From the IMG/VR virus record IMGVR_UViG_3300036846_000743, positions 62,001 through 126,000 of that record: a DNA stretch of 64,000 nt. The stretch is one strand, 5' to 3'. Position 1 is the stretch's first letter. Each line of letters starts with the position of its first letter. Positions 7,273-64,000 of this stretch are shown here, piece after piece. The translations under genes and the position numbers were made by a program. Below the pieces are notes generated by a model that saw only the letters and a list, made by a program, of their open reading frames with translations, ran no database searches and was not told where the DNA came from.

Positions 7273-7277
7273 CTCCG

Positions 7278-7754: not shown

Positions 7755-8215
7755 CCTTGCCCCGACTGTAATGCATCCTGCACATGCTTGAGCACGCCAC
7801 CCAGGAAGACGCCTGCGTCGTAGGAATGACCGAACCGCCGGCCCATCGCGTGAGCGATGCACCGGACCGGTGTGGCGTGCCTGGCACGGAAGGCACGCTC
7901 CATGATCGCGATATAGTCGCCCTGGGTCTTGACCGAGATCACGTCGCCGCAGGTCCCAGGATCGGTACCATCCTGGATCAGCTCGGCGTAATTGGTATCG
8001 ATGTTCTCGCGGTCAAAGCCAGCCGTGATGCCGGCGATATCGAGAAGATCCAGCGCCCCCGCATCCTTGTGCTTGGACTGCACGCTGGTCTCAGGGATGT
8101 TCCATTTGCGGGGCCCATAGCCGCGAGATGCTTTACCCTGCTGACCATCCTGCGTGGTCAGGTCCTTGAGATTGTTCGTGAAGACATCGTCGATCTTGCC
8201 CTTGCTCGCCATCAT
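7751..8215 (-). CDS. Hypothetical protein (154 aa)
   Basis: Translationally coupled on both sides (ATGA). Confidence 0.6.
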   Translation of the reverse strand: MMASKGKIDDVFTNNLKDLTTQDGQQGKASRGYGPRKWNIPETSVQSKHKDAGALDLLDIAGITAGFDRENIDTNYAELIQDGTDPGTCGDVISVKTQGDYIAIMERAFRARHATPVRCIAHAMGRRFGHSYDAGVFLGGVLKHVQDALQSGQG

Positions 8216-23632: not shown

Positions 23633-23680
23633 CGCTATCGGAGCCTCCATGCAGATCGAACGATGTACTCAGTCCATTGT

Positions 23681-26650: not shown

Positions 26651-29600
26651 TCAGCTTCCCGGAGGATACGGGGTCTGCCCCCGGACCGGCGGGACCGCAG
26701 CGTTGGTATCCACGTCGGCCTTCCAGGCTGTCGTCGTATCCTCGGCATAGATAGTCATCGGCAGGATCCCACTCGTTGCGCTCCAGTTCGTCGTCCATTG
26801 TATCAGCGACCGTGCTGCCTGGAGTATCGTTCGCCTGATCGTGGAAGCCGCGGAAGCGAAGCTCCGTGTCAGAGTCGCATCCGCGATGGCCGTGATCTCG
26901 GTCTGGGGCAGATCGATGAAGTCATACGTGTCGTAGGCTACGATGTCGAATTTGACATTGGTCGCCGGGAACCCTGGAACGACAGCCCTCAAGATGGTCT
27001 CGCCCAGCGTGCTGCGATCGGCAGTATCGCCGGCCAGCTGGTACCAGCCATCGCCAATCTCGCTGACGACCCCAGCGGCCGGCACCCAGCTTGTGGCCCC
27101 GGACTTCAGAAGCTGGACCGTCGGATGGGCGCCGAGGATCGGAGTGATCCGGTCGGCTTGGGTCATCAGGAAGCCGATCGGATAGTAAGTGATGGCTCGC
27201 GGATCGGCCCTGCGGCCCGCCACGGCCGACGACTTGCGATCCTTGCTGGCCATGGAGATCGGAATGCGGGTCCCGGTCCGGGGCGACATCGGCCGGCCCT
27301 GGATTGGATGGGGAGCGATATCGGTGATGGTATCGTGGCTGCGGACCCTGACCCGGCACACGACCGTGTCTGTCAGCTGCACGACTTCCGGCAGCTTCAA
27401 GAGCATCGTGTCGACCGTGTGACTCTCCTGGTACGACACCACTGCCAGAGTATCGGTCTGATAGGGCAGATCACGCCCGCCGCTGATCGTAGCGTCGGTG
27501 CTGTGCCAGAAGACATGGAAGTTGGCACAGACCGTGTCCGTACTGTGGTGATCGGTGAAGGTTCCTCGCTTCAGCCCCCAGGTGTAATGGGGCACCCAGG
27601 ACGAGGCTCGGCGCCCGGTGTCAGTACTGTGAGTCTTCGCCCGCGTCGCGTAGGCCAGCGTGTTAGTCGTGTGCGTGGTGATCACGGTCCGGAACGCTCG
27701 AAGATCAGTCTTGTGCGTCCGGGTTCGCGTGCCGTACTTCAGAGCATCAGTCTTGCTCGAGGCCGTGCGCACGGCGTAAAGCAGGCTATCGGTCGCGGAC
27801 GATCTCGCGAAGGTCGCACGGGCTCGCGTGTCGGTATTGTGGGCCCGGCTGCTCGTCCCTCGTTTCACCGTGTTGGTGGTATGAGTTCGAGTACTTGCCT
27901 TGAGCAGCAGAGCATCGGTGGCGTGGGTCACAACGGCCGTTTGCCGCAGCCGCGAATTCGTGGCATGGGTGCGTATGCTGGTGCCGCGGCACCGGATATC
28001 GGTACGGTGAGTGCAAGTCACCGCCCCGAGGCAATCAACATCCGTGGTGTGCGTCCTGAAGCCGACGCCACGCATCGACGGGAAGGAGTCAGCACCGTGA
28101 GCGATGATCGAACCGAGTCGGCAGCGCGTGTCAGTGCCGTGCGAACGCACCGAAGTGAGATAACGCAGGGCGCTGGTGGTGTGCGTCTTGATCCTAGTTC
28201 CGGCGCGGTCAACATCGGTCGAATGCACCTGCGTCGTTACGCTGCGTATTGCGGCACGAACGTCGGTGGTATGCGCCCAGACAACATTGAGTCGGCAGCG
28301 CGTGTCAGTGCCGTGCGACCGCGCCGGAGTAAGATAACGCCGCGTGTCGGTCGTGTGGGTTCGAGTCTGGCTCCCGGCGAGATCAGCATCGGTAGTATGG
28401 GCCTGGACGACGGTGCCGCGGAGCGCAAGCTGGCTATTCGTACTGTGAGTGATCGTATTGGCGCCACGAACCAGCGCATTGGTGCCATGCGGACGGCCCG
28501 CAACGGCGCGTTTCAACGCATCAGTCGTCTGGGTCCGGGTCGTTGACCCGGCAAGATCGGCATCAGCGAAGTGCGACTGGTATCCAACGCCAAGCTGGGC
28601 GAGCCAGCTATCGGTGTTGTGGCTGCAACTGTGGGTGTCAAGAAGCCAGGCATCGGTACTGTGCGTGCAGACGGCAGCGGCGAAAGTCCCGACATCAGTT
28701 GTGTGGCTGTGAGTGATCGCTCCGCCGAGATCGACGTCAGTCGTGTGAGATTGAAGCGCGACGCCAAGCTGAGCGGTCCAGCTAGCAGTGCTATGAGCCC
28801 GGCTGGAAGTAGCAAGGAGCCGAGCGTCGGTGCTGTGGATACGGACGGTGGTAGCGAAAGCCAGGGCGTCAGTCGCATGCGTCCAGGTAACCGACCCGTG
28901 GAGATCGATGTCGGTGTAGTGAACCCAGGAAGAGGTACTGAGCCTGGAAACCCGGCTGTCTGTGCTGTGAGTCCAGGTGACCGTCGTTGCCACCTGGACC
29001 AAGGTTCGCAGGACCAGCTGCGTCGCGCGCAGGTTGACACCAGTCGGCTGCACGAGGGTACGAACTGACAGCTGGGTATCACGCAGGTTGACACCAGTCG
29101 GCTGCACGAGAATGCGAACCGGCAGCTGAGTGTCGCGCAGGTTGATGCTAGTTGAAGTGCTGGTAGTGTGAGTCTTGGTCAGAGCGCCCTTGGCGTCCGT
29201 GTCGGTGACGTGAACCCGCGGGTAGCCCACCGGAGTCGCAACTATGCTGTCCGCGGTATGACTGGACAGTGATGACGCAAGGAGCAGAGCATTGGTGCCG
29301 TGATTGACAGTTCGAGACAGGTAAGTCGCACTGTCAGTCTTGTGAACCTGGAGCAGGGCTCCCTTGGCGTTCGTGTCGGTGCCGTGAACTCGCGGGTAGG
29401 CTGCCGAGATCGCGACCGTAGTGTCGGTTGTATGGGTTCGAGTCTGGGTCGCCCTGAGACTGACATCAATGCTATGGGTTTTCGCGACGGTGGTCAGCCG
29501 CGAAGTCTGCATATCAGTGCTGTGAGTCTTGATGGTCGTCGCGCGCACCAGAATATCGGTGCTATGAGCCTTCACGGCGATCCCTGCCGTCAAGGCAAGT

Positions 29601-32566
29601 GCATCGGCACCATGGGTTCGGGTCAGGGTCGCCCAGCGACCTGTATCGGTGGTGTGAGTCTTCACCGACGTTATGCAGGGCACAGCGTCGGTCGCGTGGG
29701 TCCGGGTCACGGGCCCCTTGAGATCGGCATCAGTCGCGTGAATCTTCGAGACAGTCGCCAGTACCACAGCCCGGACGTCTGTGGTGTGCGTATGGATGGC
29801 GACAGAGTAGGACCGAACATCGGTCGTATGGGTGCGAACAGCCGTGGCCTGGACCAGCGTATCGGTCGTCTGGATCTTGCTCGCCATGGCACGAGCCAGT
29901 GCATCGGTCGTTTGGGTCCTGCTTGCCACGGCGCGCGGCAGAACGTCGGTCGTGTGAATCCTGATCGTCGTGGCACGAACCAGAACATCAGTCGTCTGGG
30001 TCTTGACCGACGTAGCGCGAAGCAGAACGTCGGTCGTCTGGGTACGAGTCAAGGCCCCCTTGAGATCGGCATCGGTCGCGTGAGTCCTCGAGACAGTCGC
30101 CAGCAGAGCAGCCCGTACATCGGTCGTGTGAATCTTGGCGGCCGTACCACGGACCAGGCTGCTAGTGGCATGGATCTGGGTCTGCCCGCCAGGCAACAGA
30201 CTGTCGGTCGCATGGGCTCGAGTCGGGGCCCCCTTGAGGTCCGCGTCGCTGGCATGGGCTTTCGAGCTGGTAACCAGTCGCGAAGCCTGCGTATCGGTAC
30301 CATGAGTCTTGGTGGTCGTCGCGCGCAACAGAACGTTGGTAACGTGACCCTTGGCTCCTGCCACTACCGTTATTGCGCCGGTATCAGTGCCATGCGTCCT
30401 GCTCGTAGGCGTGACGTTGAACGGTTCATTGCCGCCGGCCAGGCTCTGGATCTGATCATTGTTAAGCGCGACGCCGTAGATCCGGACGTCATCGAGATCA
30501 CCGGTGAGATAGGTGGAAACGCCAGTGGTCGCACTCCGCCCAAGATACGTATGCATCGTCGGGCTGGGAGCAGGCACCTGAGCGCTCGTACTCGACTGAC
30601 GCCTGCCACCGACGAAGATGCGAGTGAAGGTGGGATAGACAATTCCAGTGACATGGGCCCAGACTCCAGCCGTCAGGGCCGCGTCGGCCTGCACCGTGGC
30701 GGTGCCGCCGTTGCCCGTCAACATGTACGGTATGCCGCTGGTCAGGCCCAGGGTCCAGCCCTGCGTCGCCGGGTTGTCCGTGTGACCTATGAGCGAGTAA
30801 TTACCAACAGCCGTAGGCCGGACCCAGGCCGATACCGTGAAGTTGGTAGTGAGGTTATGGGTCGGCTGAATCCCGGCGTCGAGATAGTTGGAGCCACCAG
30901 GAAAATGGCGAGCGCCTGGGTTGGTGAAGCCGTTAGGCAGAGGGCTGGTCGGCGCTGGAGTCGACGCGGTTGTGGTGCCAGGCGTATCAGTAGCATTGGC
31001 AACAGGCGGCGCCGAGTCGATCGCGACCTGAGCAGTTCCGGTCTCGTCGAGCGCCCAGTGGGCGATCAGAACGCCGAGCAGATTGCTGGAAGTGCCGTGA
31101 GTTCTGGTTACCGACGACTGTTGTACAGCGTCGGTGCTGTGCGTCTTGACTGTTGTCGCCAGCGAGACGGCATCGGTGGTATGAGTCCTGACCGGCGTTA
31201 CTCGTAGCGAAGCATTGGTCGTGTGGGTCTTGGTGGCCGTAGCGAGAGCCAGGGCGTTTGTCGTGTGAGTCTTGACCTGGACTCCCTTGGCATCTGCATC
31301 GGTAGCATGAGCCCTGGCCGCCGTCACAAGCGCCGAGACTTGCGAAGAAGTGCCGTGACTCGTGGTGTTTGCGGCACGAGCCAGATCATCAGTCTGATGC
31401 ACCCGGGTTGCCGTCGCCCTCGACAGCGCATTGGTAGTATGGGTCCGGACAGAGGTTCCCCGGAGCAGCATATCGGTCGAATGCGTCCTGACCGACGTCG
31501 CCCGCAGTGAAAGACTGGTACTGTGCGTGATCGAGCGACGGAAGACCAGCATCGAGCTGGTGCCGTGACTCGTGGGCACGCTGATATTCGCCTGGGAGAC
31601 ACCGCCCAGCCAGAGGCCAAAAATGCTCCTGTAGCCCGGTATGTGAACGCCAGGCGCCAGCTTCAGCAACGTACTGGTGCCGTGACTCCGGGAGGCCCAA
31701 GCATGTACGTAGGTCGCATCAGTCGTACTGGAGCGGGTCTGGGTACGCCGCGAGACGCCATCGGTCGAACTGGTACGAGTATGCGTTGCTGGTAGTAAAG
31801 CGTCGGTGCTGTGACTCGTGACGACGGTAGTGAGAATGAAAAGCCTGGTATCAGTGCTGTGAGTCTGGATCGTGGGTGTAGGCCCGGCGACCGTGTAGCT
31901 GCTGGTGCCGTGAGTCTTTGTCTGCGTTACCGGCGGAGGATTCAGTAATTCGAGTATGAAACCGACCCAGTTCCCGGTCGCATTGAAGGAGCAGGCACCT
32001 GTATAGTTTCCGGAGGTGGTCGTGACGTTGTAGGCACCCTGCGACACGGAAGTGGTGGCAGATACAATACCGCCCACTGCGACCGAAGTAGCCGGGGTCC
32101 CTGCCATGGCAGCTGTCGTCGGGGCAGCAACCGTCCCGAACGCCATGACGATGATCTCGGGACTGGGCAGGGACGGTATGACGATGGTCCCAGTGTTGGG
32201 CTTGGTACTGGATCCAGTAGAACTGTTGTACCCGCCCACCACATTAGCGAACGTCGTGGCAGTGCCCGAGACCTCGAAGACGTTGAGCGTGAGATGGTTC
32301 ACACCACCTGTGGCACCGAAGGTACCCGTAGTAGTCTGAGATGCCGAGTTCGCACGGACATAGCAAGCTACGCCGATGTTGGTGCCATTATCAGCCCGCG
32401 CTACCAGGGTCCAACCACTGGGCGTAGTCGGCGTTCCGACTGTTCCACCCTGCCAGAACAAAAAGGCAACGAGGCAGTTACCAGCCGTAGTGGCTGCGGG
32501 CCACGACGCACCGACTGTCGAGGTAGTAGAGCCATTCGTAGCAGTTTGGACGTAAGCAGCAGGCAT
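26651..32566 (-). CDS. Giant virion fibre/appendage protein: N-terminal beta domain, T-H-x-T-D repeat stalk, LamG domain, C-terminal anchor domain (1971 aa)
   Basis: Repeat stalk is visible in the translation; LamG signature AHWALDE...FTVSAWVRP...WAHVTG...LTGDLDDVRIYGVAL at about 30431-31075. Confidence 0.8.
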   Translation of the reverse strand: MPAAYVQTATNGSTTSTVGASWPAATTAGNCLVAFLFWQGGTVGTPTTPSGWTLVARADNGTNIGVACYVRANSASQTTTGTFGATGGVNHLTLNVFEVSGTATTFANVVGGYNSSTGSSTKPNTGTIVIPSLPSPEIIVMAFGTVAAPTTAAMAGTPATSVAVGGIVSATTSVSQGAYNVTTTSGNYTGACSFNATGNWVGFILELLNPPPVTQTKTHGTSSYTVAGPTPTIQTHSTDTRLFILTTVVTSHSTDALLPATHTRTSSTDGVSRRTQTRSSTTDATYVHAWASRSHGTSTLLKLAPGVHIPGYRSIFGLWLGGVSQANISVPTSHGTSSMLVFRRSITHSTSLSLRATSVRTHSTDMLLRGTSVRTHTTNALSRATATRVHQTDDLARAANTTSHGTSSQVSALVTAARAHATDADAKGVQVKTHTTNALALATATKTHTTNASLRVTPVRTHTTDAVSLATTVKTHSTDAVQQSSVTRTHGTSSNLLGVLIAHWALDETGTAQVAIDSAPPVANATDTPGTTTASTPAPTSPLPNGFTNPGARHFPGGSNYLDAGIQPTHNLTTNFTVSAWVRPTAVGNYSLIGHTDNPATQGWTLGLTSGIPYMLTGNGGTATVQADAALTAGVWAHVTGIVYPTFTRIFVGGRRQSSTSAQVPAPSPTMHTYLGRSATTGVSTYLTGDLDDVRIYGVALNNDQIQSLAGGNEPFNVTPTSRTHGTDTGAITVVAGAKGHVTNVLLRATTTKTHGTDTQASRLVTSSKAHASDADLKGAPTRAHATDSLLPGGQTQIHATSSLVRGTAAKIHTTDVRAALLATVSRTHATDADLKGALTRTQTTDVLLRATSVKTQTTDVLVRATTIRIHTTDVLPRAVASRTQTTDALARAMASKIQTTDTLVQATAVRTHTTDVRSYSVAIHTHTTDVRAVVLATVSKIHATDADLKGPVTRTHATDAVPCITSVKTHTTDTGRWATLTRTHGADALALTAGIAVKAHSTDILVRATTIKTHSTDMQTSRLTTVAKTHSIDVSLRATQTRTHTTDTTVAISAAYPRVHGTDTNAKGALLQVHKTDSATYLSRTVNHGTNALLLASSLSSHTADSIVATPVGYPRVHVTDTDAKGALTKTHTTSTSTSINLRDTQLPVRILVQPTGVNLRDTQLSVRTLVQPTGVNLRATQLVLRTLVQVATTVTWTHSTDSRVSRLSTSSWVHYTDIDLHGSVTWTHATDALAFATTVRIHSTDARLLATSSRAHSTASWTAQLGVALQSHTTDVDLGGAITHSHTTDVGTFAAAVCTHSTDAWLLDTHSCSHNTDSWLAQLGVGYQSHFADADLAGSTTRTQTTDALKRAVAGRPHGTNALVRGANTITHSTNSQLALRGTVVQAHTTDADLAGSQTRTHTTDTRRYLTPARSHGTDTRCRLNVVWAHTTDVRAAIRSVTTQVHSTDVDRAGTRIKTHTTSALRYLTSVRSHGTDTRCRLGSIIAHGADSFPSMRGVGFRTHTTDVDCLGAVTCTHRTDIRCRGTSIRTHATNSRLRQTAVVTHATDALLLKASTRTHTTNTVKRGTSSRAHNTDTRARATFARSSATDSLLYAVRTASSKTDALKYGTRTRTHKTDLRAFRTVITTHTTNTLAYATRAKTHSTDTGRRASSWVPHYTWGLKRGTFTDHHSTDTVCANFHVFWHSTDATISGGRDLPYQTDTLAVVSYQESHTVDTMLLKLPEVVQLTDTVVCRVRVRSHDTITDIAPHPIQGRPMSPRTGTRIPISMASKDRKSSAVAGRRADPRAITYYPIGFLMTQADRITPILGAHPTVQLLKSGATSWVPAAGVVSEIGDGWYQLAGDTADRSTLGETILRAVVPGFPATNVKFDIVAYDTYDFIDLPQTEITAIADATLTRSFASAASTIRRTILQAARSLIQWTTNWSATSGILPMTIYAEDTTTAWKADVDTNAAVPPVRGQTPYPPGS
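27350..31920 (-). repeat. Degenerate 14/16-residue coding repeat (T/S-H-x-T-D core)
   Basis: Example: ATSVRTHSTDMLLR GTSVRTHTTNALSR ATATRVHQTDDLAR; His spacing is 14 or 16; interrupted by the LamG domain. Confidence 0.9.
28995..29154 (-). repeat. 54-nt (18-aa) triplicated insert NLRDTQLxVRxLVQPTGV
   Basis: caggttgacaccagtcggctgcacgag occurs twice exactly; translation shows three units. Confidence 0.85.
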
Positions 32567-34211: not shown

Positions 34212-34898
34212 TCATCCCTCATTGAAGGCGATGCCGCGCGTGCCCACGCGCTGGCTTCGGGACCGTGACGCCGCGATCCCCAGGGCAACAAGCGAGTCAG
34301 TCGAATATATGGCCGTTTTAGGTCCTGGCGTGTAGGTGCTGGTACCATGAGTCCTGGCCGTCGTTGCGCGCAGTGTACTACCAGTAGTGAAAGTCTTGGT
34401 TGCCGCGGCGGGCAGCAGAAAGTCGGTGGTATGGGTCCTGAGCTGCGTGGCGCGCAGCAGCAGATCCGTAGTGAAGATCCTGATCGACGTGGCACGCAGC
34501 AGCACATCGGTAGCATAGGTCCTGATCGACGTGGCGAGTGGCAGCGTACCGGTAGCATGGGTCCTGATCGACGTGGCGCGCAGCAAGACGTCAGTGCTGT
34601 GAGTCTTGGTTGTTCCTACCGTCTTCGGCAGGAGATCGGTAGTAAAGGTCCTGGTCGACGTCGCCCGACGCAGAAGGTCAGTACCATGCGTCCTGGTCGT
34701 CCCTACCGCCTGCCGCAGGAGATCGGTAGTAACGGTCCTGGTCGTCCCTACCGCCTTCGGCAGGAGATTGGTAGTAAAGGTCCTGGTCGACGTCGTGACC
34801 AGCTGGGCGCCGGTAGTATGTGTCTTGACGACGGTCGCCGGCCCGGTGGGCCCGAGAGCGGAAAACGGAACAGAAGCAAATGGTCGGGCAGCAAACAT
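34212..34898 (-). CDS. Short T-H-x-T-D repeat stalk protein (228 aa)
   Basis: Starts MFAARPFASVPFSALG, then about a dozen 14-15-aa repeats like those of the giant fibre. Confidence 0.75.
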   Translation of the reverse strand: MFAARPFASVPFSALGPTGPATVVKTHTTGAQLVTTSTRTFTTNLLPKAVGTTRTVTTDLLRQAVGTTRTHGTDLLRRATSTRTFTTDLLPKTVGTTKTHSTDVLLRATSIRTHATGTLPLATSIRTYATDVLLRATSIRIFTTDLLLRATQLRTHTTDFLLPAAATKTFTTGSTLRATTARTHGTSTYTPGPKTAIYSTDSLVALGIAASRSRSQRVGTRGIAFNEG

Positions 34899-37819: not shown

Positions 37820-38353
37820 TCAGGCTCCTTCCATGAACGAGGCTAACCAAGAACGGATGTCGAAGTCTGGGTTCTTGGTCTTCATGATCTTGATCATTGC
37901 ATCAACCACCATGTGGCAGTGGCGACAAGCAGCCCCCAGGTTGTCCTCGTCATGGCTACCTTCATATTCGCGAGGAACTAAGTGGTGAGTCTGGAGGTTC
38001 TTGGTACGGCCACAGAAGATACAGGCTTTATCCCGATCGATGATCTTGGTACTCAACTTTTCCCAGTTCTTGCTACGACCTCGTCTAAGTCTGAAGGCAT
38101 TATCGATCGGGGCTCGGTGTTTCTCGCCAAGACAAGTCAAGGAGCAGTAGATCACGGACGGCTTTCGACCGCTACGTCCTCCGGCCTCGAACTTGGTTCG
38201 GCATTGTGGACAGGTCTTCGTAACTCTCCGTTTGCGTGCCTCACAAGTTGCGCCTCGCCGTGAGTCGTGATAACACTTGCCCGAGCAGTGGACCATATCG
38301 GTTCTGGGTATGACCTTGCCGCAGGTACAGTAGCGAGTCGCGTGCTTGTTCAT
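37820..38353 (-). CDS. Free-standing HNH endonuclease with N-terminal Cys (Zn) repeats
   Basis: IIDRDKACIFCG...LQTHHLVP...HDEDNLGAACRHCHMVVD; CxC/CxxC repeats upstream. Confidence 0.88.
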   Translation of the reverse strand: MNKHATRYCTCGKVIPRTDMVHCSGKCYHDSRRGATCEARKRRVTKTCPQCRTKFEAGGRSGRKPSVIYCSLTCLGEKHRAPIDNAFRLRRGRSKNWEKLSTKIIDRDKACIFCGRTKNLQTHHLVPREYEGSHDEDNLGAACRHCHMVVDAMIKIMKTKNPDFDIRSWLASFMEGA

Positions 38354-38405
38354 CCCGCCAGGATACACAGATAAAGGCGGTCCTGACCACCTTCACCTGT
38401 CATAT

Positions 38406-38948
38406 CTACGTTTCATCATATTTCCATGTGAAGGTCTCTTGTGCGGTTGCTCCTGGCGTTGCTGTACTTGCGACCACTATTTGGTACACGAACCAGGACC
38501 CGAAGTCGCCGGTGGTCGGGTTCGCGATCGAGCCAGCCAGGCTCTTGGGTGACGCCGCCGTGAAGGTGAAGGGATCCACGGGCGTCGTGATCGTAGAATA
38601 GGCACCGGTGGTGAGCTGGATGCCGGTCTGACCAACCGTGCCGGTAGCCTGGACGTAGGTCGTGGCCTCGTTACCTATGGCCGTGATCCCGGTGCCGAAG
38701 TTATTGGCACCATCCGCGTACCAGCGCAGATTGTTGATGGTCCCGGCTGGCGATGTCCCGGCCGTCAGCCGGGTGCAGACCCAGAAGCTGTAATTACTGC
38801 CGGAGGCCGGGATCTGGACCGGGCTCGACGTGTCGGCCGTCGTATGCGAGTCCAGAGCGTTGGCCCGGGTATTGATCCCGGTGATGGTGCTCTTGACAGG
38901 CGCACCAGTGGCTCCGGTCCAACGCAAGATGTCAACGGTTGCTGCCAT
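38406..38948 (-). CDS. Putative virion structural protein (180 aa, Thr-rich beta)
   Basis: Strong RBS; Thr/Gly-rich beta composition; lies between the head and fibre genes. Confidence 0.55.
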   Translation of the reverse strand: MAATVDILRWTGATGAPVKSTITGINTRANALDSHTTADTSSPVQIPASGSNYSFWVCTRLTAGTSPAGTINNLRWYADGANNFGTGITAIGNEATTYVQATGTVGQTGIQLTTGAYSTITTPVDPFTFTAASPKSLAGSIANPTTGDFGSWFVYQIVVASTATPGATAQETFTWKYDET

Positions 38949-39003
38949 GGGGAACTCCCTTTCCTCGAATGACCTCCGTGCGGGCCACGGGTATTAGGCG
39001 CCG

Positions 39004-39032
39004 ATTCTACGGCCTGACTAGATCAACTGCAA
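39004..39032 (-). promoter_or_regulatory. Candidate sigma70-type promoter TTGCAG-N17-TAGAAT
   Basis: -35 at 39027-39032, -10 at 39004-39009, 17-nt spacer, upstream of 38406..38948. Confidence 0.45.
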
Positions 39033-40289
39033 GCCTGGGTGGCGTTGACCTTTCAAGGCTACGAGATCAGCGTACACGTATTTTAACTCTTGCAGCTTGT
39101 GCCAGTCACTCGGATAGCACTCCCAAACCCGCACGGCCTGAAAGCGACAGATGATCTCCGGGCAATACGCTGCGTAACGCCGATCACAATAATACCGAAA
39201 GCTCAAGTCATTCCAAAAGGAGGCATGGGTCGGATCGCAAAAAGCCCCCTTGCCGCCCGTCGAGGGCGTGCGGCTGATGATCCAGCCGCCCGGCACCAGG
39301 CAGCGCCACAGATCGTTCATGACCGGGATGACGTGCTCCCGGGGGATATGCTCCAGGAAGTCAGCCGCCCGGAAGATGCCGACCGAATTATCCTCGAACG
39401 GTAGCCCCTTGGTCACGTCACAGATGATATCGGCATCTCGCAGGTCGATCGACTTGTAGCCTTCGGGACAGTCAATCCGGCCGCCCAGATCGAACCTGGG
39501 AAGCCCGTTGCGGCGGGACCATTCATGCGCCAGCTTCCAGGTATACCGGTTCTGGTTCCTGTGATGGACTTTTTCCAGAGTCCCGTCTTCGCGGAAGGTA
39601 CGGAAGCTATTCTGCGCCTCCTCCGCCACGTTGATGCGCTCCCGGTACATATAGAGTGGCCGCGGGACGTGATGGAAGGGCACTTCAGCCAGGTACATGC
39701 GGCAGATCATGTCGTGATCGTCGCAGATGGGCAGTTCCGGGTCATGACCGTCGACGAGGGCGTAAGCGGTCTTGGTCCAGGCCCGGACGTGATTGGGAGC
39801 ATAGTAGATCTGGCGGAGACTTGAAGCTGTCGGCTCGAAGGCGCTCGTCGCCATGTAGGACCGGCCGGCATACTGGAACGGGTAGCTCCGCCATCCCTGG
39901 TCCTCGCCGAAGGTATGACTGCTGTGGTCGACCCAGAATTGGATGAAGTCCGAGTAGACGAACGCTGGCTGTTCCGGATCATACACTGCTGCCGCCACTT
40001 CGGTGAGGCAATCGGGTGTCAGCATGTCATCGTGATCCAGCTCGACGATCACTGGTCCAGCAGCCTGATTGCAAAGCTGCCGCTTCAGGGCCCCGACATT
40101 ACCGACCATGGTCCAGTCTTCAGGCAACACCTTGACGCGAGCATCCGTCATGATGCGCGCAGGGACCCTGGCACCACCATTGGGCAAGAGCAACCAGTCC
40201 CAATCCGTATGTGTCTGTGCCTGTAGGCTGGTCCATGCATCGTCCAGCCAACTTATATCGTGGGTCGGCGTCACAACGGTCAAATGCAT
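39018..40289 (-). CDS. GT2 glycosyltransferase fused to a class I SAM methyltransferase (start re-placed to MHLTVVTPTH)
   Basis: GT-A: TVVTPTH, LQAQTHTDWDWLLL, VELDHDD, DDHDMICR, LYMYR. MTase: RFDLGG, DIICDVTKGLPFEDNSV, DFLEHI, MNDLWRCLVPGGW, DPTHASFW. Confidence 0.9.
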   Translation of the reverse strand: MHLTVVTPTHDISWLDDAWTSLQAQTHTDWDWLLLPNGGARVPARIMTDARVKVLPEDWTMVGNVGALKRQLCNQAAGPVIVELDHDDMLTPDCLTEVAAAVYDPEQPAFVYSDFIQFWVDHSSHTFGEDQGWRSYPFQYAGRSYMATSAFEPTASSLRQIYYAPNHVRAWTKTAYALVDGHDPELPICDDHDMICRMYLAEVPFHHVPRPLYMYRERINVAEEAQNSFRTFREDGTLEKVHHRNQNRYTWKLAHEWSRRNGLPRFDLGGRIDCPEGYKSIDLRDADIICDVTKGLPFEDNSVGIFRAADFLEHIPREHVIPVMNDLWRCLVPGGWIISRTPSTGGKGAFCDPTHASFWNDLSFRYYCDRRYAAYCPEIICRFQAVRVWECYPSDWHKLQELKYVYADLVALKGQRHPGLQLI

Positions 40290-40326
40290 CCTGCGGGCTC
40301 CGCGGCCAACCCTTATCCGAGCAACA

Positions 40327-40689
40327 TCACGTTGGCATCTTCGGAGGATCGATTGGCTCGGGCCAGGTCGGATCGACGCCGCCGAGTACGGCGCCGGGAT
40401 AGCCAATGGCCTGGGGATCGAGCACCACGCCCAGTGCCTTGGTGTTGTCGTAGACGAACACCGAAGGTGTCGCGATGATGGTCAGAAGGCCAGCGGATAC
40501 GGCCGCCTCCATCGCCTTGAACTGGCGATTGCTGGACTTGGCGGCCAGCCGATCGACAAGGTTGCCGGCGACCGTCAGCTGCTCCTGGGGAGCCATGGTC
40601 TTACCATGAGGCGGGATGAAGCTGAAAATGATCTCCCGCCCGCTGGTGTTCTGGATCGTGGTGTAGAGATAATTAAGTGCGGCTGGCAC
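40327..40689 (-). CDS. Hypothetical protein, possibly head-associated (120 aa)
   Basis: GTG start with AAGGAG upstream; downstream of the capsid genes. Confidence 0.6.
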   Translation of the reverse strand: MPAALNYLYTTIQNTSGREIIFSFIPPHGKTMAPQEQLTVAGNLVDRLAAKSSNRQFKAMEAAVSAGLLTIIATPSVFVYDNTKALGVVLDPQAIGYPGAVLGGVDPTWPEPIDPPKMPT

Positions 40690-41202: not shown

Positions 41203-42144
41203 TCAGGCGAAGTCAGCGCGGGCGAGGCCGCCGGTGTGGCCGATCGTGCCACCCATGGTCTCGTAGGCGAAGAACTCGAGAAGATATGCTTCTCTCTTTA
41301 TATACATCGTCGTGTCTTCCAAAACATACATTTTCCCAATAAACTTCGGATCAGCATACATGAATATGGTATCCGTAGGCACCAGATCATGTTTGATGCT
41401 GATGATCCAACGCTTATCGAGAAAGTCGGTCTCGCTCCAGCCATTTCGCAGCACGTCCTGGCTGAAGTCACCGCCCATCTCATCACGGCCCCACTTCATG
41501 ACCTCCTTGATGGAGATGTTGTTGATCAAGACGGTCGCGGCTTCGAGCCGCGCATCAGTGCTCGGCATGATCTTGAGCGAATCCAGCACCGAGTCGCGCG
41601 TGATGCCGCCATGGATCGTGACCCATTGGGGAATGCCCGACCAGGGCACGTTCAAGTCAGCGCCCATGAGCGCTAAGTTGGTTGCCCCTATGAGTTTGCT
41701 ATCCTCTTCCGCCAGCATGTCCTTGATAGCATTGTCAGAAAGGACCTGCCGGATGTCCATGATCCAGGTGCGGAGTTCGTCGACGTCCTTGGTGAACCGT
41801 GGTGTCACGATGCGATCGAACGCAACGCGATATCGCGGGCCGCGGATGTAGACGTTGGTGGGCAGGGTAGCGAAGGGAATGGAAATGGCAGCCGGCGAAT
41901 CCGGCTCTTTGTCCACAATCTTCACTGGTTTGTCGGTATCAACCTGCCGGTCCAGCTCATCATTGGCGATCTGGAGCGGCGGCATGATGCGTCGTGCGAA
42001 TCCATCTTCACGCATCTTGATGCGAGTGAAGTCGTTGACCGCGTCGATCGCGGTCTTGATCATCCCCGGGTTCGTCAGGTTAGCGAAGAGCGTCTCATTC
42101 ATGAGCTGCACTTCGGACCTGGTCATGATGGCGCCAGCTGCCAC
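41203..42144 (-). CDS. Major capsid protein, HK97/encapsulin-like fold (about 313 aa)
   Basis: REDGFARRIMPP...RYRVAFDRIVTPRFTKDVDELR...DIRQV...DMLAEEDSKLI...LEFFAYETMGGTIGH; GTG 42144 with GGAGGAG; follows protease, scaffold and decoration genes. Confidence 0.82.
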   Translation of the reverse strand: MAAGAIMTRSEVQLMNETLFANLTNPGMIKTAIDAVNDFTRIKMREDGFARRIMPPLQIANDELDRQVDTDKPVKIVDKEPDSPAAISIPFATLPTNVYIRGPRYRVAFDRIVTPRFTKDVDELRTWIMDIRQVLSDNAIKDMLAEEDSKLIGATNLALMGADLNVPWSGIPQWVTIHGGITRDSVLDSLKIMPSTDARLEAATVLINNISIKEVMKWGRDEMGGDFSQDVLRNGWSETDFLDKRWIISIKHDLVPTDTIFMYADPKFIGKMYVLEDTTMYIKREAYLLEFFAYETMGGTIGHTGGLARADFA

Positions 42145-42196
42145 TTTAGTCTCCTCCGTGAATGGGTATCCTGACGAACAAACGACGACGATTGAC

Positions 42197-42814
42197 TCAA
42201 GTGCACTTGGGGACGTAAACCGGCCAGAACGACAAGACCGGCACCCGATGGTGATTGATGTGATCAGCACGACTGACAACGGCACAGATCCCATTGGTCA
42301 AGTTGGTGACCGCAGTGCCCGGAGCCGGAAATGCCGTCCAGAACGCGGTAGCACCCAGCTTGCCAGCGAAGGATCGATCGACGCCGGTACCGACCGGGAA
42401 CATGGCCTCGGTGGGTGCGGTCAGCTGCTGACCAGGGGTGTAGTGGACGGTGGGATTCTGCGTGGGATCGCCCTGGAAGAATTCCGTCGTCTCCAGCTCG
42501 AAGCCGCCGGCGGCGACCAGGCCGGACATCTTGCCCGTGGGCGCGATGGCGGTCCAGTTATTCCCGCCAGGGTTCTGAACATCCAGCTCATGGGACCCCT
42601 GGAGCAGGAAGATCCCCATGTTGCTGGGGCCGAGACCCAGCTCGAACTCACCAGCTGCGTTGACATGGACGACGCTCCCGCCATAGACGGGATCAACCGT
42701 CACGTTGGCCGACAGAAACGCGTCGAAGTCAAGGGCAGCCTCATCGGGCCACCCTTTGAGTTCATCGAGGCAATGCTCGAACATCAGAATTGGACCGGTG
42801 TAAGCGGTAACCAT
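42197..42814 (-). CDS. Capsid decoration/cement-like protein (205 aa)
   Basis: Immediately upstream of the MCP; beta-rich, with GGFELETTEF and YTPGQQLTA. Confidence 0.55.
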   Translation of the reverse strand: MVTAYTGPILMFEHCLDELKGWPDEAALDFDAFLSANVTVDPVYGGSVVHVNAAGEFELGLGPSNMGIFLLQGSHELDVQNPGGNNWTAIAPTGKMSGLVAAGGFELETTEFFQGDPTQNPTVHYTPGQQLTAPTEAMFPVGTGVDRSFAGKLGATAFWTAFPAPGTAVTNLTNGICAVVSRADHINHHRVPVLSFWPVYVPKCT

Positions 42815-54388: not shown

Positions 54389-56365
54389 TCAACTGCCGCC
54401 ACGCCAGGTAGCAGCGCCTCCGTGGACCGGCATTTTGAGTCGGTCCACTGATGCATCATGACCATCCAGGTCGTCGTTGTCGACATCCCAGGATCCGTCG
54501 TCAGGATCCCAACCCTTGGTCAGGCCCTGCCGCCCGAAGTGAGTGCGCTCGGCCAGCGCGGGCACGTAGCTCGTACCGGCAACGTCACTGGTAGCGCCCC
54601 GATGCGCCGCCTGCAACGTGGCCTTCTCAAGGCCGGACCCCAGATGCCGGGTCATGAAGTCGGGATCATGCTGGAGGTTGTACATGCCCCGGACCATCAT
54701 GGGTTCGAAGGGCGGCGGCTCGTCATGGACTTCCAGATTGTTCACTCCGAACTCCCTGAGTTCGGGAAGCATCCCCTGGCGGACCTTGGTGCCTATGGTG
54801 TGATGCAGGACCGGACGCTCGAGATACTTGCCCACAGCCGATGGCAGCTCGACCACACGGGACCCTTCCCGGGGACGCCAGTTGTTCTCGACGTGTGAGT
54901 ACGGCACCACGTCATCCTCCACGTGATCACCGAATTCGTCCGTGACCCGAACGTGATCGATCAGGCCGCGGGCCAGCAACTCGACATTGCGCCGGTGGCT
55001 GCTCATGCCCGAGTTACGATAGGCGTCTCCGAATGCCCCGACGAAATACCGGCGGCCCTCGCCAATGCCTTTGTGCCGAACGACTTCGGCAGGGTTGGGT
55101 ATCCCGTCCGAGAGCACGTCGCCAGCCTCGACACTATCGCCGATCTCGACCTTCGGGTCCATACCGGCGGGGACGTAGTGCTGCTCGGATCCGACCATGA
55201 CGTACTTGCCGCCCTGGGGAGCGTCAGTGATCGCCGAGACCTTGCCGTCGAGCTGAGCATGCGTGGCCCCGCCCTTGAAGGTCTTGGGCACCTGAATTAA
55301 CTGGTTGATATGGGCAAACCCAGAGACGGCTTTGTCGGCCCCGGCGACGCCGCCGGTATGCCGGGCCGAAAGCTGGCCCTGGGAGAGCTTCTCCGAAACG
55401 GCCTGCGCAGCAGCCAGGCCCACGTAGTCGCCCAGCGGGGGTAAACCGCCCCGCTCCCGGATGCCGACATCCCGGGCATAGACGCCTCCCTGGGGCGGCC
55501 CGCCAATCATGGGCGATCGGACCAGGATACGACCATGCCCCTGAGCCTGGAGGTCCTTGAGGACCTTGGGCGTCAGGGTCGTATTTCGCTTGTAGGGGCC
55601 GATGGGGCGAGCCAGCAGGGCACCTTCGTTATCGGGATCATCGGTCGCGACTGGCAGGCCGCGCACCGAGGTCGTATCGTCAGGGCCGTCGTGATCGGTC
55701 ACGATCAGACGGTGCACGACCTGGTTGAGCTGCTTGCTCAGGAAGCCAGCGTCCTGGGTGGCAAACTTGGTCGAGACAACGCCCTTGCGAGCACCGAAGG
55801 CACCGGCCCAGTACTCGGCAGGCGAAAGACCATGAGGGTACGAGTTCAGGACAGGGATCGGGATCGGCCGGTCGTGATGATCGACGTACATCAGGTCGGA
55901 GCCCATGAAAGACTTCAGGTTCGTCTTGCTGCCCCGCGCGCCTGAGAGCACCTGGCGGACAAACGGATTGTCAGCCGCCTTGGCCTCGTCGAAGATCGCG
56001 TTCTCCATGTGATCACGGTACTTGTCCACCGCGGCAACGATCGCCTGCTCTTTTTGGTCGTCAGTTGTCCGGGTGTTGGCCTGGATCATCTGGACTTCGC
56101 GGCGAATCTGTTCCTTGATCCGCTCGCCAGTCTTGCTGGGCCGCATGTCTTCCAGAGCGACCGAGAAGCCGCCGGTGGAATATGCTACATCACGACCAAC
56201 GTCAGAAAGCCGCTTGGCAACGTCGCGGTAGATCTCGGGGCGGCGCTCGGCGATGTCCTGGAAAAGTTGCCTGATACCTTTGGCGTCGAGAACGCGATTG
56301 TAGTCTTTGAGTTCAGGCGGTAAACTTTCGTTCACCATCAAATTCCCTAGAGTTGTCCGGAGCAT
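54389..56365 (-). CDS. rpoC: RNA polymerase beta' subunit, C-terminal part
   Basis: SGARG; bridge helix EYWAGAFGARKGVVSTKFATQDAGFLSKQL; trigger loop AAQAVSEKLSQGQLSARHTGG; RRNVELLARGL. Start 56365 (or 56392). Confidence 0.92.
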   Translation of the reverse strand: MLRTTLGNLMVNESLPPELKDYNRVLDAKGIRQLFQDIAERRPEIYRDVAKRLSDVGRDVAYSTGGFSVALEDMRPSKTGERIKEQIRREVQMIQANTRTTDDQKEQAIVAAVDKYRDHMENAIFDEAKAADNPFVRQVLSGARGSKTNLKSFMGSDLMYVDHHDRPIPIPVLNSYPHGLSPAEYWAGAFGARKGVVSTKFATQDAGFLSKQLNQVVHRLIVTDHDGPDDTTSVRGLPVATDDPDNEGALLARPIGPYKRNTTLTPKVLKDLQAQGHGRILVRSPMIGGPPQGGVYARDVGIRERGGLPPLGDYVGLAAAQAVSEKLSQGQLSARHTGGVAGADKAVSGFAHINQLIQVPKTFKGGATHAQLDGKVSAITDAPQGGKYVMVGSEQHYVPAGMDPKVEIGDSVEAGDVLSDGIPNPAEVVRHKGIGEGRRYFVGAFGDAYRNSGMSSHRRNVELLARGLIDHVRVTDEFGDHVEDDVVPYSHVENNWRPREGSRVVELPSAVGKYLERPVLHHTIGTKVRQGMLPELREFGVNNLEVHDEPPPFEPMMVRGMYNLQHDPDFMTRHLGSGLEKATLQAAHRGATSDVAGTSYVPALAERTHFGRQGLTKGWDPDDGSWDVDNDDLDGHDASVDRLKMPVHGGAATWRGGS

Positions 56366-56401
56366 GGCAACGTCACACCCCCGCTTCACCATACGCTTTC
56401 G

Positions 56402-63329: not shown

Positions 63330-63339
63330 AGGGCCCTCC

Positions 63340-64000
63340 TTACTTGGGGTGCGGCTGTACCAGTTGCTGTCCAGCGACGCGGCCCAGCGATCCAGCCAGG
63401 CTGGGTAATTGCGGCGGGGACGGCTCTGCCGGCTTCTCGGGCTTCGCCGGCTTGCCATCGGTCGGCGTCATGAGCCGGTTCCAGACGGCCATCTGATTGG
63501 CCTTGATCCGGTTCAGGAATTGGTCGGCCGCCTGGCCGACACTGGCGTGCTTCTCTTTCTTCGCCGGCTCCTCGTCTGGTTCCTTCCTGGCCCCGAACGC
63601 ACGGTGCCAGATCGACGGCTTCGGCCGCATGATCGGTGTCGGCATCGGGATCGCCATGATCGGGCTCGGGGCCTGCTCGGCAATCTGGGCCTGCCGCCGC
63701 TTCACTGCCTCCTCGACGGCCTTGTCCTCGGCCGTTGATCTGGCCCAGTGATAACCACCCAGGCCGGCACCCAGCATGAGGCCGCCGCCCAGCGTCAGGG
63801 CACCACCCATAAGCGGACCGTACCAGCCTTCTGCCTGCTTCTCGTAGAGACTGGCCAGCACATCGAGCGAGCTGGGCTTCGGATCTGCCGAAGCCAGCTT
63901 GCGCCGGCCGGCCAGCGCACTCTCGTAGCCCTTGCGCGCCTCTTCCAGCTCACTCTCCTGCTCGGCCGTCCGGGTCTTGTCGAGCAGATAGTCAGTCAGC
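63340..64000 (-). CDS. Glycine-zipper hypothetical protein, 5'-truncated by window edge
   Basis: The track ORF 63340..63861 stays open upstream to base 64000 (LTDYLLDKTRTAEQ...); MGGALTLGGGLMLGAGLGGY; EKQAE and EKHAS motifs. Confidence 0.7.
   Translation of the reverse strand, partial: LTDYLLDKTRTAEQESELEEARKGYESALAGRRKLASADPKPSSLDVLASLYEKQAEGWYGPLMGGALTLGGGLMLGAGLGGYHWARSTAEDKAVEEAVKRRQAQIAEQAPSPIMAIPMPTPIMRPKPSIWHRAFGARKEPDEEPAKKEKHASVGQAADQFLNRIKANQMAVWNRLMTPTDGKPAKPEKPAEPSPPQLPSLAGSLGRVAGQQLVQPHPK

What the first reader, a model, noticed from the sequence alone, without database searches (positions are those of the whole stretch)
39018..40289. Glycosyltransferase-methyltransferase fusion between capsid and Thr-rich fibre genes
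Seen: a GT2+SAM-MTase fusion inside the morphogenesis operon, next to extremely Thr/Ser-rich appendage proteins. Known: some actinobacteriophages glycosylate their virion proteins with phage-encoded GTs. Inference: virion decoration with methylated glycans rather than DNA modification.
Basis: partly seen in the sequence, partly recalled or inferred. Interest (0 to 1): 0.6.

Follow-up and report, generated by a model that had tools for sequence, protein, structure and literature searches.

The report
Phage sugar-and-methyl enzyme tied to collagen-like fibres
A jumbo phage carries, among its virion-building genes, a fused sugar-transferase/methyl-transferase whose relatives in hundreds of bacteria and phages sit next to glutamine-rich collagen-like proteins, so its likely target is the phage's collagen-like tail fibre, not its DNA or the threonine-rich proteins next door.

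Summary
Window 39018..40289 (minus strand) is one 423-aa gene. It has an N-terminal GT2/GT-A glycosyltransferase with an intact ELDHDD motif and a C-terminal class-I methyltransferase fold. It lies between the major head gene and the tail sheath gene of a 226-kb jumbo myophage.

The fusion is not unique. At least 585 viral contigs and 539 bacterial species genomes encode full-length relatives.

The new result is its conserved partner. In 67 of 79 bacterial loci a collagen-like (Gly-X-Y) gene lies within 3 kb, against 4 of 70 for the distal parts of the same loci (p = 2e-24). So do 25 of 78 viral loci. All six phage records that are nearly complete or complete and carry the enzyme, this one included, encode collagen-like tail-fibre proteins.

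These partner collagens are of an unusual type, with Gln at 55-57% of Y positions. Control collagens from genomes without the enzyme are Thr-type (Thr 60%).

The virion-decoration reading is therefore supported and DNA modification is not. The likeliest substrate is the phage's 312-aa G-X-Q collagen-like fibre, about 45 kb downstream, rather than the neighbouring Thr-rich proteins.

The chemistry is unresolved: the acceptor residue, the sugar, and whether the methyltransferase domain is active.

The parts
39018..40289 (-). GT2 plus methyltransferase-fold fusion gene, 423 aa. This is the finding.
   Evidence: ORF and start codon. Pfam. PHROG methyltransferase. AF2 model at pLDDT 92.7. More than 1200 full-length homologues.
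39585..40289 (-). N-terminal GT-A/GT2 glycosyltransferase domain, residues about 1-235. The ELDHDD metal/nucleotide-sugar motif is at residues 83-88 and the DD at 190-191.
   Evidence: PF00535 at 27.3 bits, above the cut-off. Foldseek and VIA hits to K4CP, SpsA, WrtF, TarS, RmlT and GalNAc-T at Z 17-21.8. Invariant columns.
39021..39584 (-). C-terminal class-I methyltransferase-fold domain, residues about 236-423. It has a non-canonical motif I (FDLGGR), a conserved acidic residue after beta2, RAxDFLEH, and a near-invariant TPSxxG+GA++DPTH block (G.GA..DPTH in the broader sample of alignment A2; here TPSTGGKGAFCDPTH).
   Evidence: Alignment A2. Profile against PDB methyltransferases, E = 3.6e-6. 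VIA Z 11.8-12.7 over residues 250-414. Methyltransf_11 at 20.9 bits against a cut-off of 21.2.
41203..42294 (-). Probable major head protein. The real start is probably the Met at about 42126.
   Evidence: phrog_2522 major head protein, E = 2.9e-7. Translation. The syntenic 313-aa gene in relative L006.
40327..40689 (-). 120-aa ORF directly upstream of the fusion gene, function unknown.
   Evidence: no family hit.
38406..38948 (-). 180-aa Thr-rich protein (19% Thr) directly downstream.
   Evidence: Composition. Translation. No family hits. Syntenic 182-aa gene in L006.
37820..38368 (-). HNH homing endonuclease inserted in the module.
   Evidence: phrog_1271, E = 2.8e-16.
34212..34898 (-). 228-aa protein with 25% Thr, built of 14-15-aa tandem repeats.
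26651..32566 (-). 1971-aa Thr-rich (19%) protein with a Laminin_G_3 (ConA-like) domain, probably an appendage or fibre protein.
20852..23650 (-). Tail sheath gene. It marks the tail end of the module that holds the fusion gene.
   Evidence: phrog_279, E = 3.3e-9.

Best explanation
The gene encodes a soluble, two-domain enzyme made late in infection, together with the virion proteins, and it modifies a structural protein after translation.

By the company its relatives keep, the substrate is most probably the collagen-like (Gly-X-Gln-rich) region of a fibre protein. In this phage that would be the 312-aa collagen-like tail-fibre protein at G000:C1:56004-56942. It lies about 5 kb beyond the low end of the window, on the same strand, about 45 kb downstream of the enzyme gene.

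The proposed mechanism is as follows. The N-terminal inverting GT-A domain, with its DxD motif and a divalent metal, transfers a sugar from a nucleotide-sugar to the unfolded or folding collagen chain in the cytoplasm. The fused C-terminal SAM-dependent domain then methylates that sugar, or possibly the protein itself. The decorated fibre is then assembled into the virion.

What is shown: both folds, intact GT catalytic motifs, position in the structural module, and the family-wide genomic linkage to G-X-Q collagen-like genes. What is inferred: that the linkage means enzyme and substrate, the acceptor residue, the donor sugar, activity of the methyltransferase domain, and that the distant collagen-like gene is the target in this phage.
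For: 1. Folds and motifs.

2. Structural-module position: major head upstream, sheath and baseplate downstream, all on one strand. Synteny is kept in 67-79%-identical jumbo-phage relatives.

3. Partner in bacteria: 73 of 79 loci have a Gly-X-Y run of at least 10 triplets within 10 kb, and 67 of 79 within 3 kb, mostly directly upstream on the same strand. The distal parts of the same loci give 4 of 70 (odds ratio 92, p = 2e-24). Pfam Collagen is confirmed on the representatives, whose non-collagen domains differ (a Kelch propeller in one, no Pfam match in the others), so the collagen region is the only part they share.

4. Partner in phages: 25 of 78 viral loci have such a run within 3 kb, on Collagen + Peptidase_S74 fibre proteins. 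All six records that carry the enzyme and are at least 84% complete or are complete genomes have collagen-like genes, and the 50%-complete close relative G001 has a 316-aa one about 49 kb away, as here. The three negatives are fragments 58-73% complete.

5. The phage's own collagen-like protein hits tail-fibre PHROGs and Pfam Collagen.

6. Specificity: partner collagens have Gln at 55-57% of Y positions. S-CRM01's three tail-fibre collagens have 54-67%. Twenty control collagens from Mucilaginibacter genomes without the enzyme have Thr 60% and Gln 17%.

7. Precedent: C. difficile SgtA, a GT-A domain plus an accessory domain, is encoded next to collagen-like bclA3 and glycosylates its repeats (PMC7157674).
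Against: - In this phage the enzyme gene is not next to the collagen-like gene (about 45 kb apart). Its own neighbours are non-collagen Thr-rich proteins.
- Genomic linkage is not proof of an enzyme-substrate relation.
- Four partner collagens have almost no Ser or Thr in their repeats, so ordinary O-glycosylation of the repeats cannot be general. Lys is at most 2% of Y positions, and no 2OG oxygenase is encoded here, so the animal hydroxylysine route is out.
- Motif I of the methyltransferase domain is non-canonical, and Pfam Methyltransf_11 falls just under its cut-off. The domain could be a binding module only.
- No phage-encoded nucleotide-sugar epimerase or dehydratase was found.
- Collagen-like genes are fairly common in large phages, so the 6-of-6 co-occurrence has no proper background rate.
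Confidence: 0.55

Rival explanations
1. The enzyme O-glycosylates the adjacent Thr-rich virion proteins (the 180-aa, 228-aa and 1971-aa proteins) and/or the capsid, and methylates the glycan, as mycobacteriophages decorate capsid and tail-tube subunits.
For: The gene lies directly between the head gene and three proteins with 19-25% Thr. This arrangement is conserved in relatives. GT-A enzymes that act on Ser/Thr of proteins (GalNAc-T) are structural neighbours at Z 17. Virion glycosylation by phage glycosyltransferases is documented (Freeman et al. 2023, as cited in PMC12619734 and PMC10877033).
Against: Family-wide, the conserved partner is a Gln-type collagen, not Thr-rich proteins. Thr-type collagens occur without the enzyme. 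No similarity to any mycobacteriophage glycosyltransferase at E <= 1e-5 in 50,697 phage records. High Thr is common in beta-rich fibre proteins and is not itself evidence of glycosylation.
Confidence: 0.2
2. The enzyme remodels a host envelope glycan (LPS O-chain or another polysaccharide) during infection, for example to block superinfection. This is how glycosyltransferases in the tail-fibre regions of pelagimyophages have been read.
For: The nearest solved structures are polysaccharide and teichoic-acid GT2 enzymes: K4CP, SpsA, WrtF, TarS, RmlT. That interpretation is published for aquatic myophage glycosyltransferases (PMC7029224). Source annotations of homologues say 'O-antigen biosynthesis' or 'cell wall biosynthesis'.
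Against: The bacterial homologues are not in polysaccharide gene clusters. They form a two-gene unit with a collagen-like gene. The gene is in a late structural module of a lytic-type jumbo phage. No membrane segment or other pathway genes lie nearby.
Confidence: 0.08
3. The enzyme glycosylates (and methylates) phage DNA bases to evade restriction.
For: Phage glycosyltransferases often do this. The genome has a thymidylate-synthase-family gene (C1:198105-198995) and three other GT2-like ORFs elsewhere.
Against: The gene is in the morphogenesis module, not with the replication or nucleotide genes. Hundreds of chromosomal bacterial homologues pair with collagen-like genes. The ThyA-family hit is full-length at 228 bits and consistent with ordinary ThyA. 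No Tet/JBP search was made.
Confidence: 0.03
4. Only the GT domain is catalytic. The methyltransferase-fold domain has lost SAM chemistry and serves as the substrate-recognition module for the collagen chain, as the TPR domain is thought to do in SgtA.
For: Motif I is DLGG/DLCGG/DLGAA, not GxGxG. Pfam Methyltransf_11 matches only its C-terminal half and falls below the cut-off. The most conserved block (DGRGAFQDPTH) lies outside the SAM-binding motifs.
Against: A Gly-rich loop after beta1, the acidic residue after beta2 (at least 90% conserved) and the motif IV-like RAxDFLEH are all retained. The profile aligns DLGGA with DVGCG of solved methyltransferases. The whole domain is under strong conservation.
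Confidence: 0.14

Closest known systems
C. difficile SgtA / BclA3 (a glycosyltransferase encoded next to a collagen-like exosporium protein)
   Same: A GT-A (WcaA/GT2-like) N-terminal catalytic domain followed by a C-terminal accessory domain. The gene is adjacent to a collagen-like protein gene. The enzyme is soluble and metal-dependent and acts on the collagen repeat region (PMC7157674).
   Different: SgtA's second domain is TPR, not a methyltransferase fold. Its acceptor is Thr in Thr-rich repeats, whereas the partners here are Gln-rich and often lack Thr. Sequence homology between the two was not tested because no SgtA sequence was held. In this phage the two genes are 45 kb apart.
Mycobacteriophage virion glycosylation (Che8-type glycosyltransferases; Freeman et al. 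2023)
   Same: Phage-encoded glycosyltransferases that decorate virion proteins.
   Different: No detectable sequence similarity: tblastn against 50,697 phage records at E <= 1e-5 found only S-CRM01 and one uncultured megaphage. The substrates are different (capsid and tail-tube C-termini). The paper itself could not be read here; its content is known only through citing papers.
GT-methyltransferase fusions that build methyl-capped protein glycans: chlorovirus PBCV-1 A064R and Geobacillus WsaE (recalled from my own knowledge, not tested here)
   Same: Glycosyltransferase and methyltransferase domains on one polypeptide, acting on the glycan of a capsid or S-layer protein. This supports the 'sugar, then methyl cap' logic.
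   Different: Different domain order and number. No homology test was run. Their substrates are not collagen-like.
Animal and Mimivirus collagen glycosylation (LH3/ColGalT1, Mimivirus L230)
   Same: Post-translational glycosylation of Gly-X-Y chains before triple-helix formation by GT-A enzymes. LH3/ColGalT1 is a structural neighbour at Z 11.9.
   Different: Those systems need hydroxylysine at Y and a 2OG oxygenase. Here Lys is at most 2% of Y positions. This genome has no 2OG-FeII_Oxy_3 gene, and such oxygenases accompany the family in only 17 of 80 viral loci and about 0-1 of 80 bacterial loci.
Synechococcus phage S-CRM01 gp90 (SCRM01_090c, annotated 'glycosyl transferase' or 'methyltransferase')
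   Same: The only cultured-phage member of the family: full length, 35% identity. That phage also has three Gln-type collagen-like proteins in its tail-fibre module, about 50 kb from the enzyme gene.
   Different: In S-CRM01 the gene sits among early and auxiliary genes (psbA, hli, nusG), not in the structural module. It is uncharacterised experimentally as far as the papers searched show.

Membership tests
Glycosyltransferase family 2 (GT-A fold, inverting) | Match to Pfam PF00535 above the gathering score | tested here: met
   27.3 bits against a 23.3 cut-off, residues 4-107; 29.1 bits in the genome scan.
Glycosyltransferase family 2 (GT-A fold, inverting) | GT-A Rossmann-like fold | tested here: met
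   AF2 model at pLDDT 92.7. VIA Z 21.8 to K4CP, 21.4 to WrtF, 19.6 to SpsA. Foldseek E = 4e-12.
Glycosyltransferase family 2 (GT-A fold, inverting) | DxD metal/nucleotide-sugar motif and a downstream acidic catalytic residue | tested here: met
   E83, D85, H86, D87, D88 and D190, D191 are invariant in 43 sequences.
Glycosyltransferase family 2 (GT-A fold, inverting) | Sugar transfer activity, donor and acceptor | not testable with these tools
   Needs an enzyme assay.
Class I SAM-dependent methyltransferase | Seven-strand Rossmann-like methyltransferase fold | tested here: met
   Residues 250-414 match 3sm3, 1vl5, 1xxl, 5ufm and 6mro at Z 11.8-12.7.
Class I SAM-dependent methyltransferase | Pfam methyltransferase model above the gathering score | tested here: inconclusive
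   Methyltransf_11 scores 20.9 against 21.2 and covers only profile positions 48-94. A family profile hits PDB methyltransferases at E = 3.6e-6. PHROG 6636 methyltransferase, E = 9e-6.
Class I SAM-dependent methyltransferase | Motif I glycine-rich loop (E/D-x-G-x-G-x-G) and an acidic residue at the end of beta2 for SAM binding | tested here: inconclusive
   Motif I is D-L-(G/C)-(G/A)-(G/A), here FDLGGR, so canonical GxGxG is not met. The beta2 acidic residue is conserved in at least 90% of sequences.
Mycobacteriophage virion glycosyltransferases | Sequence relatedness to the glycosyltransferases of glycosylating actinobacteriophages | tested here: not met
   tblastn of the whole protein against 50,697 phage records: 4 records, none an actinobacteriophage.
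Collagen-like-protein modification module (SgtA/BclA3-like two-gene unit) | Enzyme gene adjacent to a collagen-like protein gene | tested here: inconclusive
   Met for the family: 67 of 79 bacterial and 25 of 78 viral loci within 3 kb. Not met in this phage, where the only collagen-like gene is about 45 kb away at C1:56004-56942.
Collagen-like-protein modification module (SgtA/BclA3-like two-gene unit) | Thr (or Ser) acceptor in the repeats | tested here: not met
   Partner repeats have Y = Gln 55-57% and Thr 17-18%. Four partners have under 5% Ser+Thr. Thr-type collagens occur without the enzyme.
Collagen-like-protein modification module (SgtA/BclA3-like two-gene unit) | Demonstrated modification of the collagen-like protein | not testable with these tools
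   Needs mass spectrometry or an in vitro assay.

The most novel reading that the evidence does not exclude
The family is a dedicated modifier of a distinct class of prokaryotic and phage collagens, the 'G-X-Gln' collagens, and its acceptor is the Y-position glutamine itself. The modification would be N-glycosylation and/or N5-methylation of the side-chain amide. This would be a collagen post-translational modification with no known counterpart, playing the stabilising or masking role that hydroxyproline or glycosylated Thr play elsewhere. Gln is the only non-Gly residue present in the repeats of all 111 partner collagens examined. Some partners have no Ser, Thr or Lys in their repeats.
Probability: 0.2. 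Interest if true: 0.85.

Novelty: new variant of a known kind. Interest (0 to 1): 0.62.

Why it matters
Phage-encoded decoration of virions is known from only a few systems. Glycosyltransferases found in the tail-fibre regions of aquatic myophages have usually been read as host-LPS or DNA modifiers.

A family of more than a thousand proteins, shared by jumbo phages, T4-like aquatic phages and diverse bacteria, is here tied to a specific Gln-type class of collagen-like proteins. That gives those genes a concrete, testable function. It also points to an undescribed modification of bacterial and phage collagens, which are of interest as recombinant biomaterials precisely because they are thought to need no modification.

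Cultured carriers make the test straightforward: S-CRM01, Mucilaginibacter flavidus, Thiothrix eikelboomii, and many Streptomyces and Micromonospora strains.

For phage biology, modified fibres could change host recognition, stability or antibody recognition.

Tried and rejected
- **Hydroxylysine or hydroxyproline route.** 2OG-Fe(II) oxygenases sit near the gene in 17 of 80 viral loci, but in about 0-1 of 80 bacterial loci and not at all in this genome. Lys is rare at Y. Rejected as the general mechanism.
- **Direct sequence searches.** The search against PDB gave only marginal methyltransferase hits. NCBIfam gave nothing useful.
- **DNA similarity.** Megablast of 10 kb against the phage collection found no match.
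- **Promoter and terminator scan of 36000-43500.** Counts were within about two standard deviations of the shuffled sequences and there was no clear operon boundary.
- **Neighbour annotation.** PHROG and Pfam scans of most neighbours gave no hits.
- **Freeman et al. 2023** could not be opened.
- **Literature.** Seven searches found no paper linking this fusion family to collagen-like proteins. This is absence in the held library only.
- **Genome-level co-occurrence in high-GC actinobacteria.** Not attempted, because alternative reading frames give spurious collagen hits there.
- **Tree.** The maximum-likelihood tree is the quick version; the careful search did not finish.
- **Unpublished genome.** The 62-of-81 collagen tally in Mucilaginibacter includes one unpublished genome, G016. 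No sequence was taken from it, and without it the tally is 61 of 80.
Full report
**The gene**

The minus-strand ORF 40406..39018 most plausibly starts at the ATG at 40289, 35 nt after the stop of the upstream 120-aa ORF.

Pfam places Glycos_transf_2 on residues 4-107, above its curated cut-off. It places the C-terminal half of Methyltransf_11 on residues 289-338, 0.3 bits under its cut-off. A PHROG methyltransferase family matches residues 244-337.

An AlphaFold2 model built on 43 homologues is confident (pLDDT 92.7, pTM 0.91). Residues 1 to about 260 superpose on GT-A/GT2 enzymes: K4CP at Z 21.8, WrtF, SpsA, TarS, RmlT, and GalNAc-transferases at Z 17. Residues 250-414 superpose on class-I SAM methyltransferases at Z 11.8-12.7.

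ELDHDD (residues 83-88) and D190-D191 are invariant across the family, so the glycosyltransferase looks catalytically intact.

The C-terminal domain is less clear-cut:
- It keeps a glycine-rich loop after beta1, but as D-L-(G/C)-(G/A)-(G/A), here FDLGGR, rather than GxGxG.
- It keeps an acidic residue after beta2 in at least 90% of sequences.
- It has an RAxDFLEH motif and a near-invariant TPSxxG+GA++DPTH block (G.GA..DPTH across the broader sample; here TPSTGGKGAFCDPTH).
- A profile of the domain hits solved methyltransferases at E = 3.6e-6 and aligns DLGGA with their DVGCG.

The observation 'GT2 + SAM-MTase fusion' is therefore confirmed as an architecture. Methyltransferase activity is plausible but unproven.

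**The genome and the module**

The window is bases 62001-126000 of a 226,073-bp IMG/VR virus record that CheckV rates as complete. It has about 61% G+C, and nearly every gene is on the minus strand.

Upstream of the gene lie split multisubunit RNA-polymerase genes and a weak but specific major-head match at 41203..42294. Downstream lie a tail sheath (20852..23650) and a baseplate wedge (5605..7272). The gene therefore sits in the late morphogenesis block of a jumbo myophage.

Relatives at 67-79% identity on contigs of 103-231 kb keep the same gene order. The homing endonuclease next door differs: HNH here, LAGLIDADG there.

**The family**

The fusion is far from unique.
- A word-based search found more than 1200 full-length proteins with the same architecture.
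- They also confirmed relatives in 539 of the species-representative bacterial genomes.

The nearest cellular relatives, at 44-51% identity, are in Betaproteobacteria (Casimicrobiaceae, Sulfuricella), Thiothrix and Thiolinea, and Polyangiaceae. Micromonospora, Streptomyces and Mucilaginibacter follow at about 40%.

In a quick maximum-likelihood tree, the jumbo-phage clade (support 100) falls in a well-supported half together with the proteobacterial and myxobacterial sequences. The actinobacterial sequences and most T4-like phage sequences fall in the other half.

Among 50,697 deposited phage genomes, the only full-length relative is gp90 of Synechococcus phage S-CRM01. No actinobacteriophage matches.

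**The conserved partner**

I called ORFs in the 80 bacterial and 80 viral loci and clustered the neighbours. In bacteria one neighbour family dominates: it is present in 67 of 80 loci, usually directly upstream on the same strand. It is a collagen-like protein.

I then counted Gly-X-Y runs of at least 10 triplets in any frame:
- 73 of 79 bacterial loci have one within the 10-kb flanks, and 67 of 79 within 3 kb of the enzyme gene.
- Only 4 of 70 loci have one in the part more than 5 kb away. The odds ratio is 92 and p = 2e-24.
- Many bacterial contigs end 1-3 kb upstream of the enzyme gene, inside such repeats. This explains most of the apparent misses.

Pfam Collagen is confirmed on the representatives. 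Their non-collagen domains differ (a Kelch propeller in Mucilaginibacter, no Pfam match in the others), so the collagen region is the only thing the partners share.

In the viral loci, 25 of 78 have such a run within 3 kb. These lie on Collagen + Peptidase_S74 fibre proteins, next to T4-type neck and terminase genes, a second GT2-DUF6445 gene, and in 17 loci 2OG-Fe(II) oxygenases.

Where the collagen gene is not adjacent, it is elsewhere in the genome:
- All six phage records that carry the enzyme and are at least 84% complete or are complete genomes have collagen-like genes. These are this genome, G003, G004, G006, G007 and S-CRM01.
- The half-complete close relative G001 has a 316-aa one about 49 kb from its enzyme gene.
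- The three negatives are fragments 58-73% complete.

**This phage's collagen-like gene**

A six-frame scan of the whole genome finds a single collagen-like gene, at G000:C1:56004-56942 on the minus strand. It encodes 312 aa with about 40 Gly-X-Y triplets. It lies about 5 kb beyond the low end of the window, downstream of the baseplate genes. It matches Pfam Collagen (E = 7e-13) and tail-fibre PHROGs (E = 3.6e-15).

**What kind of collagen**

The partner repeats are unusual. Gln occupies 55-57% of Y positions and Thr 17-18%, while Lys is at most 2%. Every one of the 111 loci with repeats has at least 14% Gln at Y, with a median of 57%. Four have under 5% Ser+Thr in the repeats. One example is the Streptomyces-type GAQGAQGDAGAQ repeat, and another is the Mucilaginibacter GNQGFQGDKGDQ repeat.

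As a control I searched 81 Mucilaginibacter genomes. Collagen-like genes are common there (62 of 81, one of them an unpublished genome from which nothing was taken), but the enzyme is present only in the query species. Twenty collagen-like genes fetched from genomes without the enzyme have Thr 60% and Gln 17% at Y. The two collagens next to the enzyme have Gln 78% and Thr 0%.

The literature value for bacterial collagens in general is Thr 31.6% at Y (PMC8968730). S-CRM01's three collagen-like proteins, which sit among tail-collar and tail-fibre-assembly genes, have Gln at 54-67% of Y positions. This phage's own collagen has Gln at 13 of 37 Y positions.

The enzyme therefore goes with Gln-type collagens specifically, and Thr-type collagens do without it.

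**Interpretation**

The linkage across distant bacterial phyla and several phage groups, the shared collagen region, and the precedent of C. difficile SgtA all point the same way. SgtA has a GT-A domain plus an accessory domain, is encoded next to collagen-like bclA3, and adds GlcNAc to its repeats (PMC7157674). Modification of a collagen-like structural protein is therefore the best-supported function.

It moves the likely substrate away from the Thr-rich neighbours and onto the G-X-Q collagen-like tail fibre.

The chemistry is open. Ordinary Ser/Thr O-glycosylation cannot be the general reaction inside the repeats. The hydroxylysine route is excluded here. Glutamine is the only universal candidate residue within the repeats. 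If the acceptor really is Gln, this would be a new kind of collagen modification, which I rate at about 0.2.

The methyltransferase domain may methylate the sugar. From my own knowledge, not tested here, that is what happens in other GT-methyltransferase fusions such as chlorovirus A064R or Geobacillus WsaE. It may instead methylate the protein, or serve only as a binding module.

**Rivals**

- Host-envelope remodelling is the published reading for glycosyltransferases in aquatic myophage fibre regions (PMC7029224). It is weakened by the bacterial contexts, which are not polysaccharide clusters.
- DNA glycosylation is weakened by the same contexts and by the gene's position. The genome's three other GT2-like ORFs and its ThyA-family gene lie elsewhere.

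**Limits**

- All functional statements are inferred from folds, motifs and gene neighbourhoods.
- My ORF calling in the loci was crude. The Gly-X-Y counts do not depend on it.
- There is no proper background rate of collagen-like genes in phages that lack the enzyme.

Noticed in passing
window 54389..56392, 57827..59815, 59859..63458 (all minus strand): Split multisubunit RNA-polymerase genes lie directly upstream of the structural module. One is a beta-like gene (Rpb2_6) with a weak LAGLIDADG_3 match near its C-terminus. One fuses the end of Rpb2_6 to Rpb1_1/Rpb1_2. One is a beta-prime C-terminal piece (Rpb1_4/Rpb1_5). This is typical of RNAP-encoding jumbo phages; the possible homing-endonuclease or intein insertion was not examined.
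   Followed up: partly
window 37820..38368 (minus strand); L006:11884-12393: An HNH endonuclease gene sits two genes downstream of the fusion gene. A 78%-identical relative carries a LAGLIDADG_1 endonuclease at the same position, so two different homing endonuclease families occupy one site.
   Followed up: no
window 34212..34898 and 29861..30041: The 228-aa protein with 25% Thr is made of 42-45-nt tandem repeats (T-x-T-F-T-T-D-L-L-x-x-A-x-x-T-type units). A 42-nt array of about 4 copies also lies inside the 1971-aa Thr-rich gene.
   Followed up: partly
G000:C1:153099-154146 and 168108-168446 (outside the window); C1:198105-198995: Three further GT2-like ORFs and a full-length thymidylate-synthase-family gene lie elsewhere in the phage genome. 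Their roles, including any DNA modification, were not examined.
   Followed up: no
L098, L100-L102, L107, L109, L129, L131, L140, L142, L151, L165, L168 and others: In many Thiothrix and Micromonospora draft assemblies the contig ends 1-3 kb upstream of the enzyme gene, inside the collagen-like repeats. The repeats break short-read assemblies and hide the partner gene from annotation.
   Followed up: partly
viral loci such as L083:1157-2845, L059:4703-5278, L068:7556-8290: In T4-like aquatic phage contigs the fusion gene is often preceded directly by a second enzyme (GT2 + DUF6445, 24 loci) and accompanied by 2OG-Fe(II) oxygenases (17 loci). This suggests a larger fibre-modification cassette in those phages that is absent from this genome.
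   Followed up: partly
L135:7831-9963 and L134:8053-9978 (Mucilaginibacter): The partner collagen has a long, near-perfect GNQGFQGDKGDQ repeat fused to a Kelch beta-propeller domain, an unusual architecture for a bacterial collagen-like protein.
   Followed up: no
window 7233..8211: The only sizeable plus-strand ORF called in the window (7233..7823, 196 aa, low GC3 of 0.60) and a gap of about 400 nt interrupt the otherwise all-minus-strand baseplate region. Not examined.
   Followed up: no
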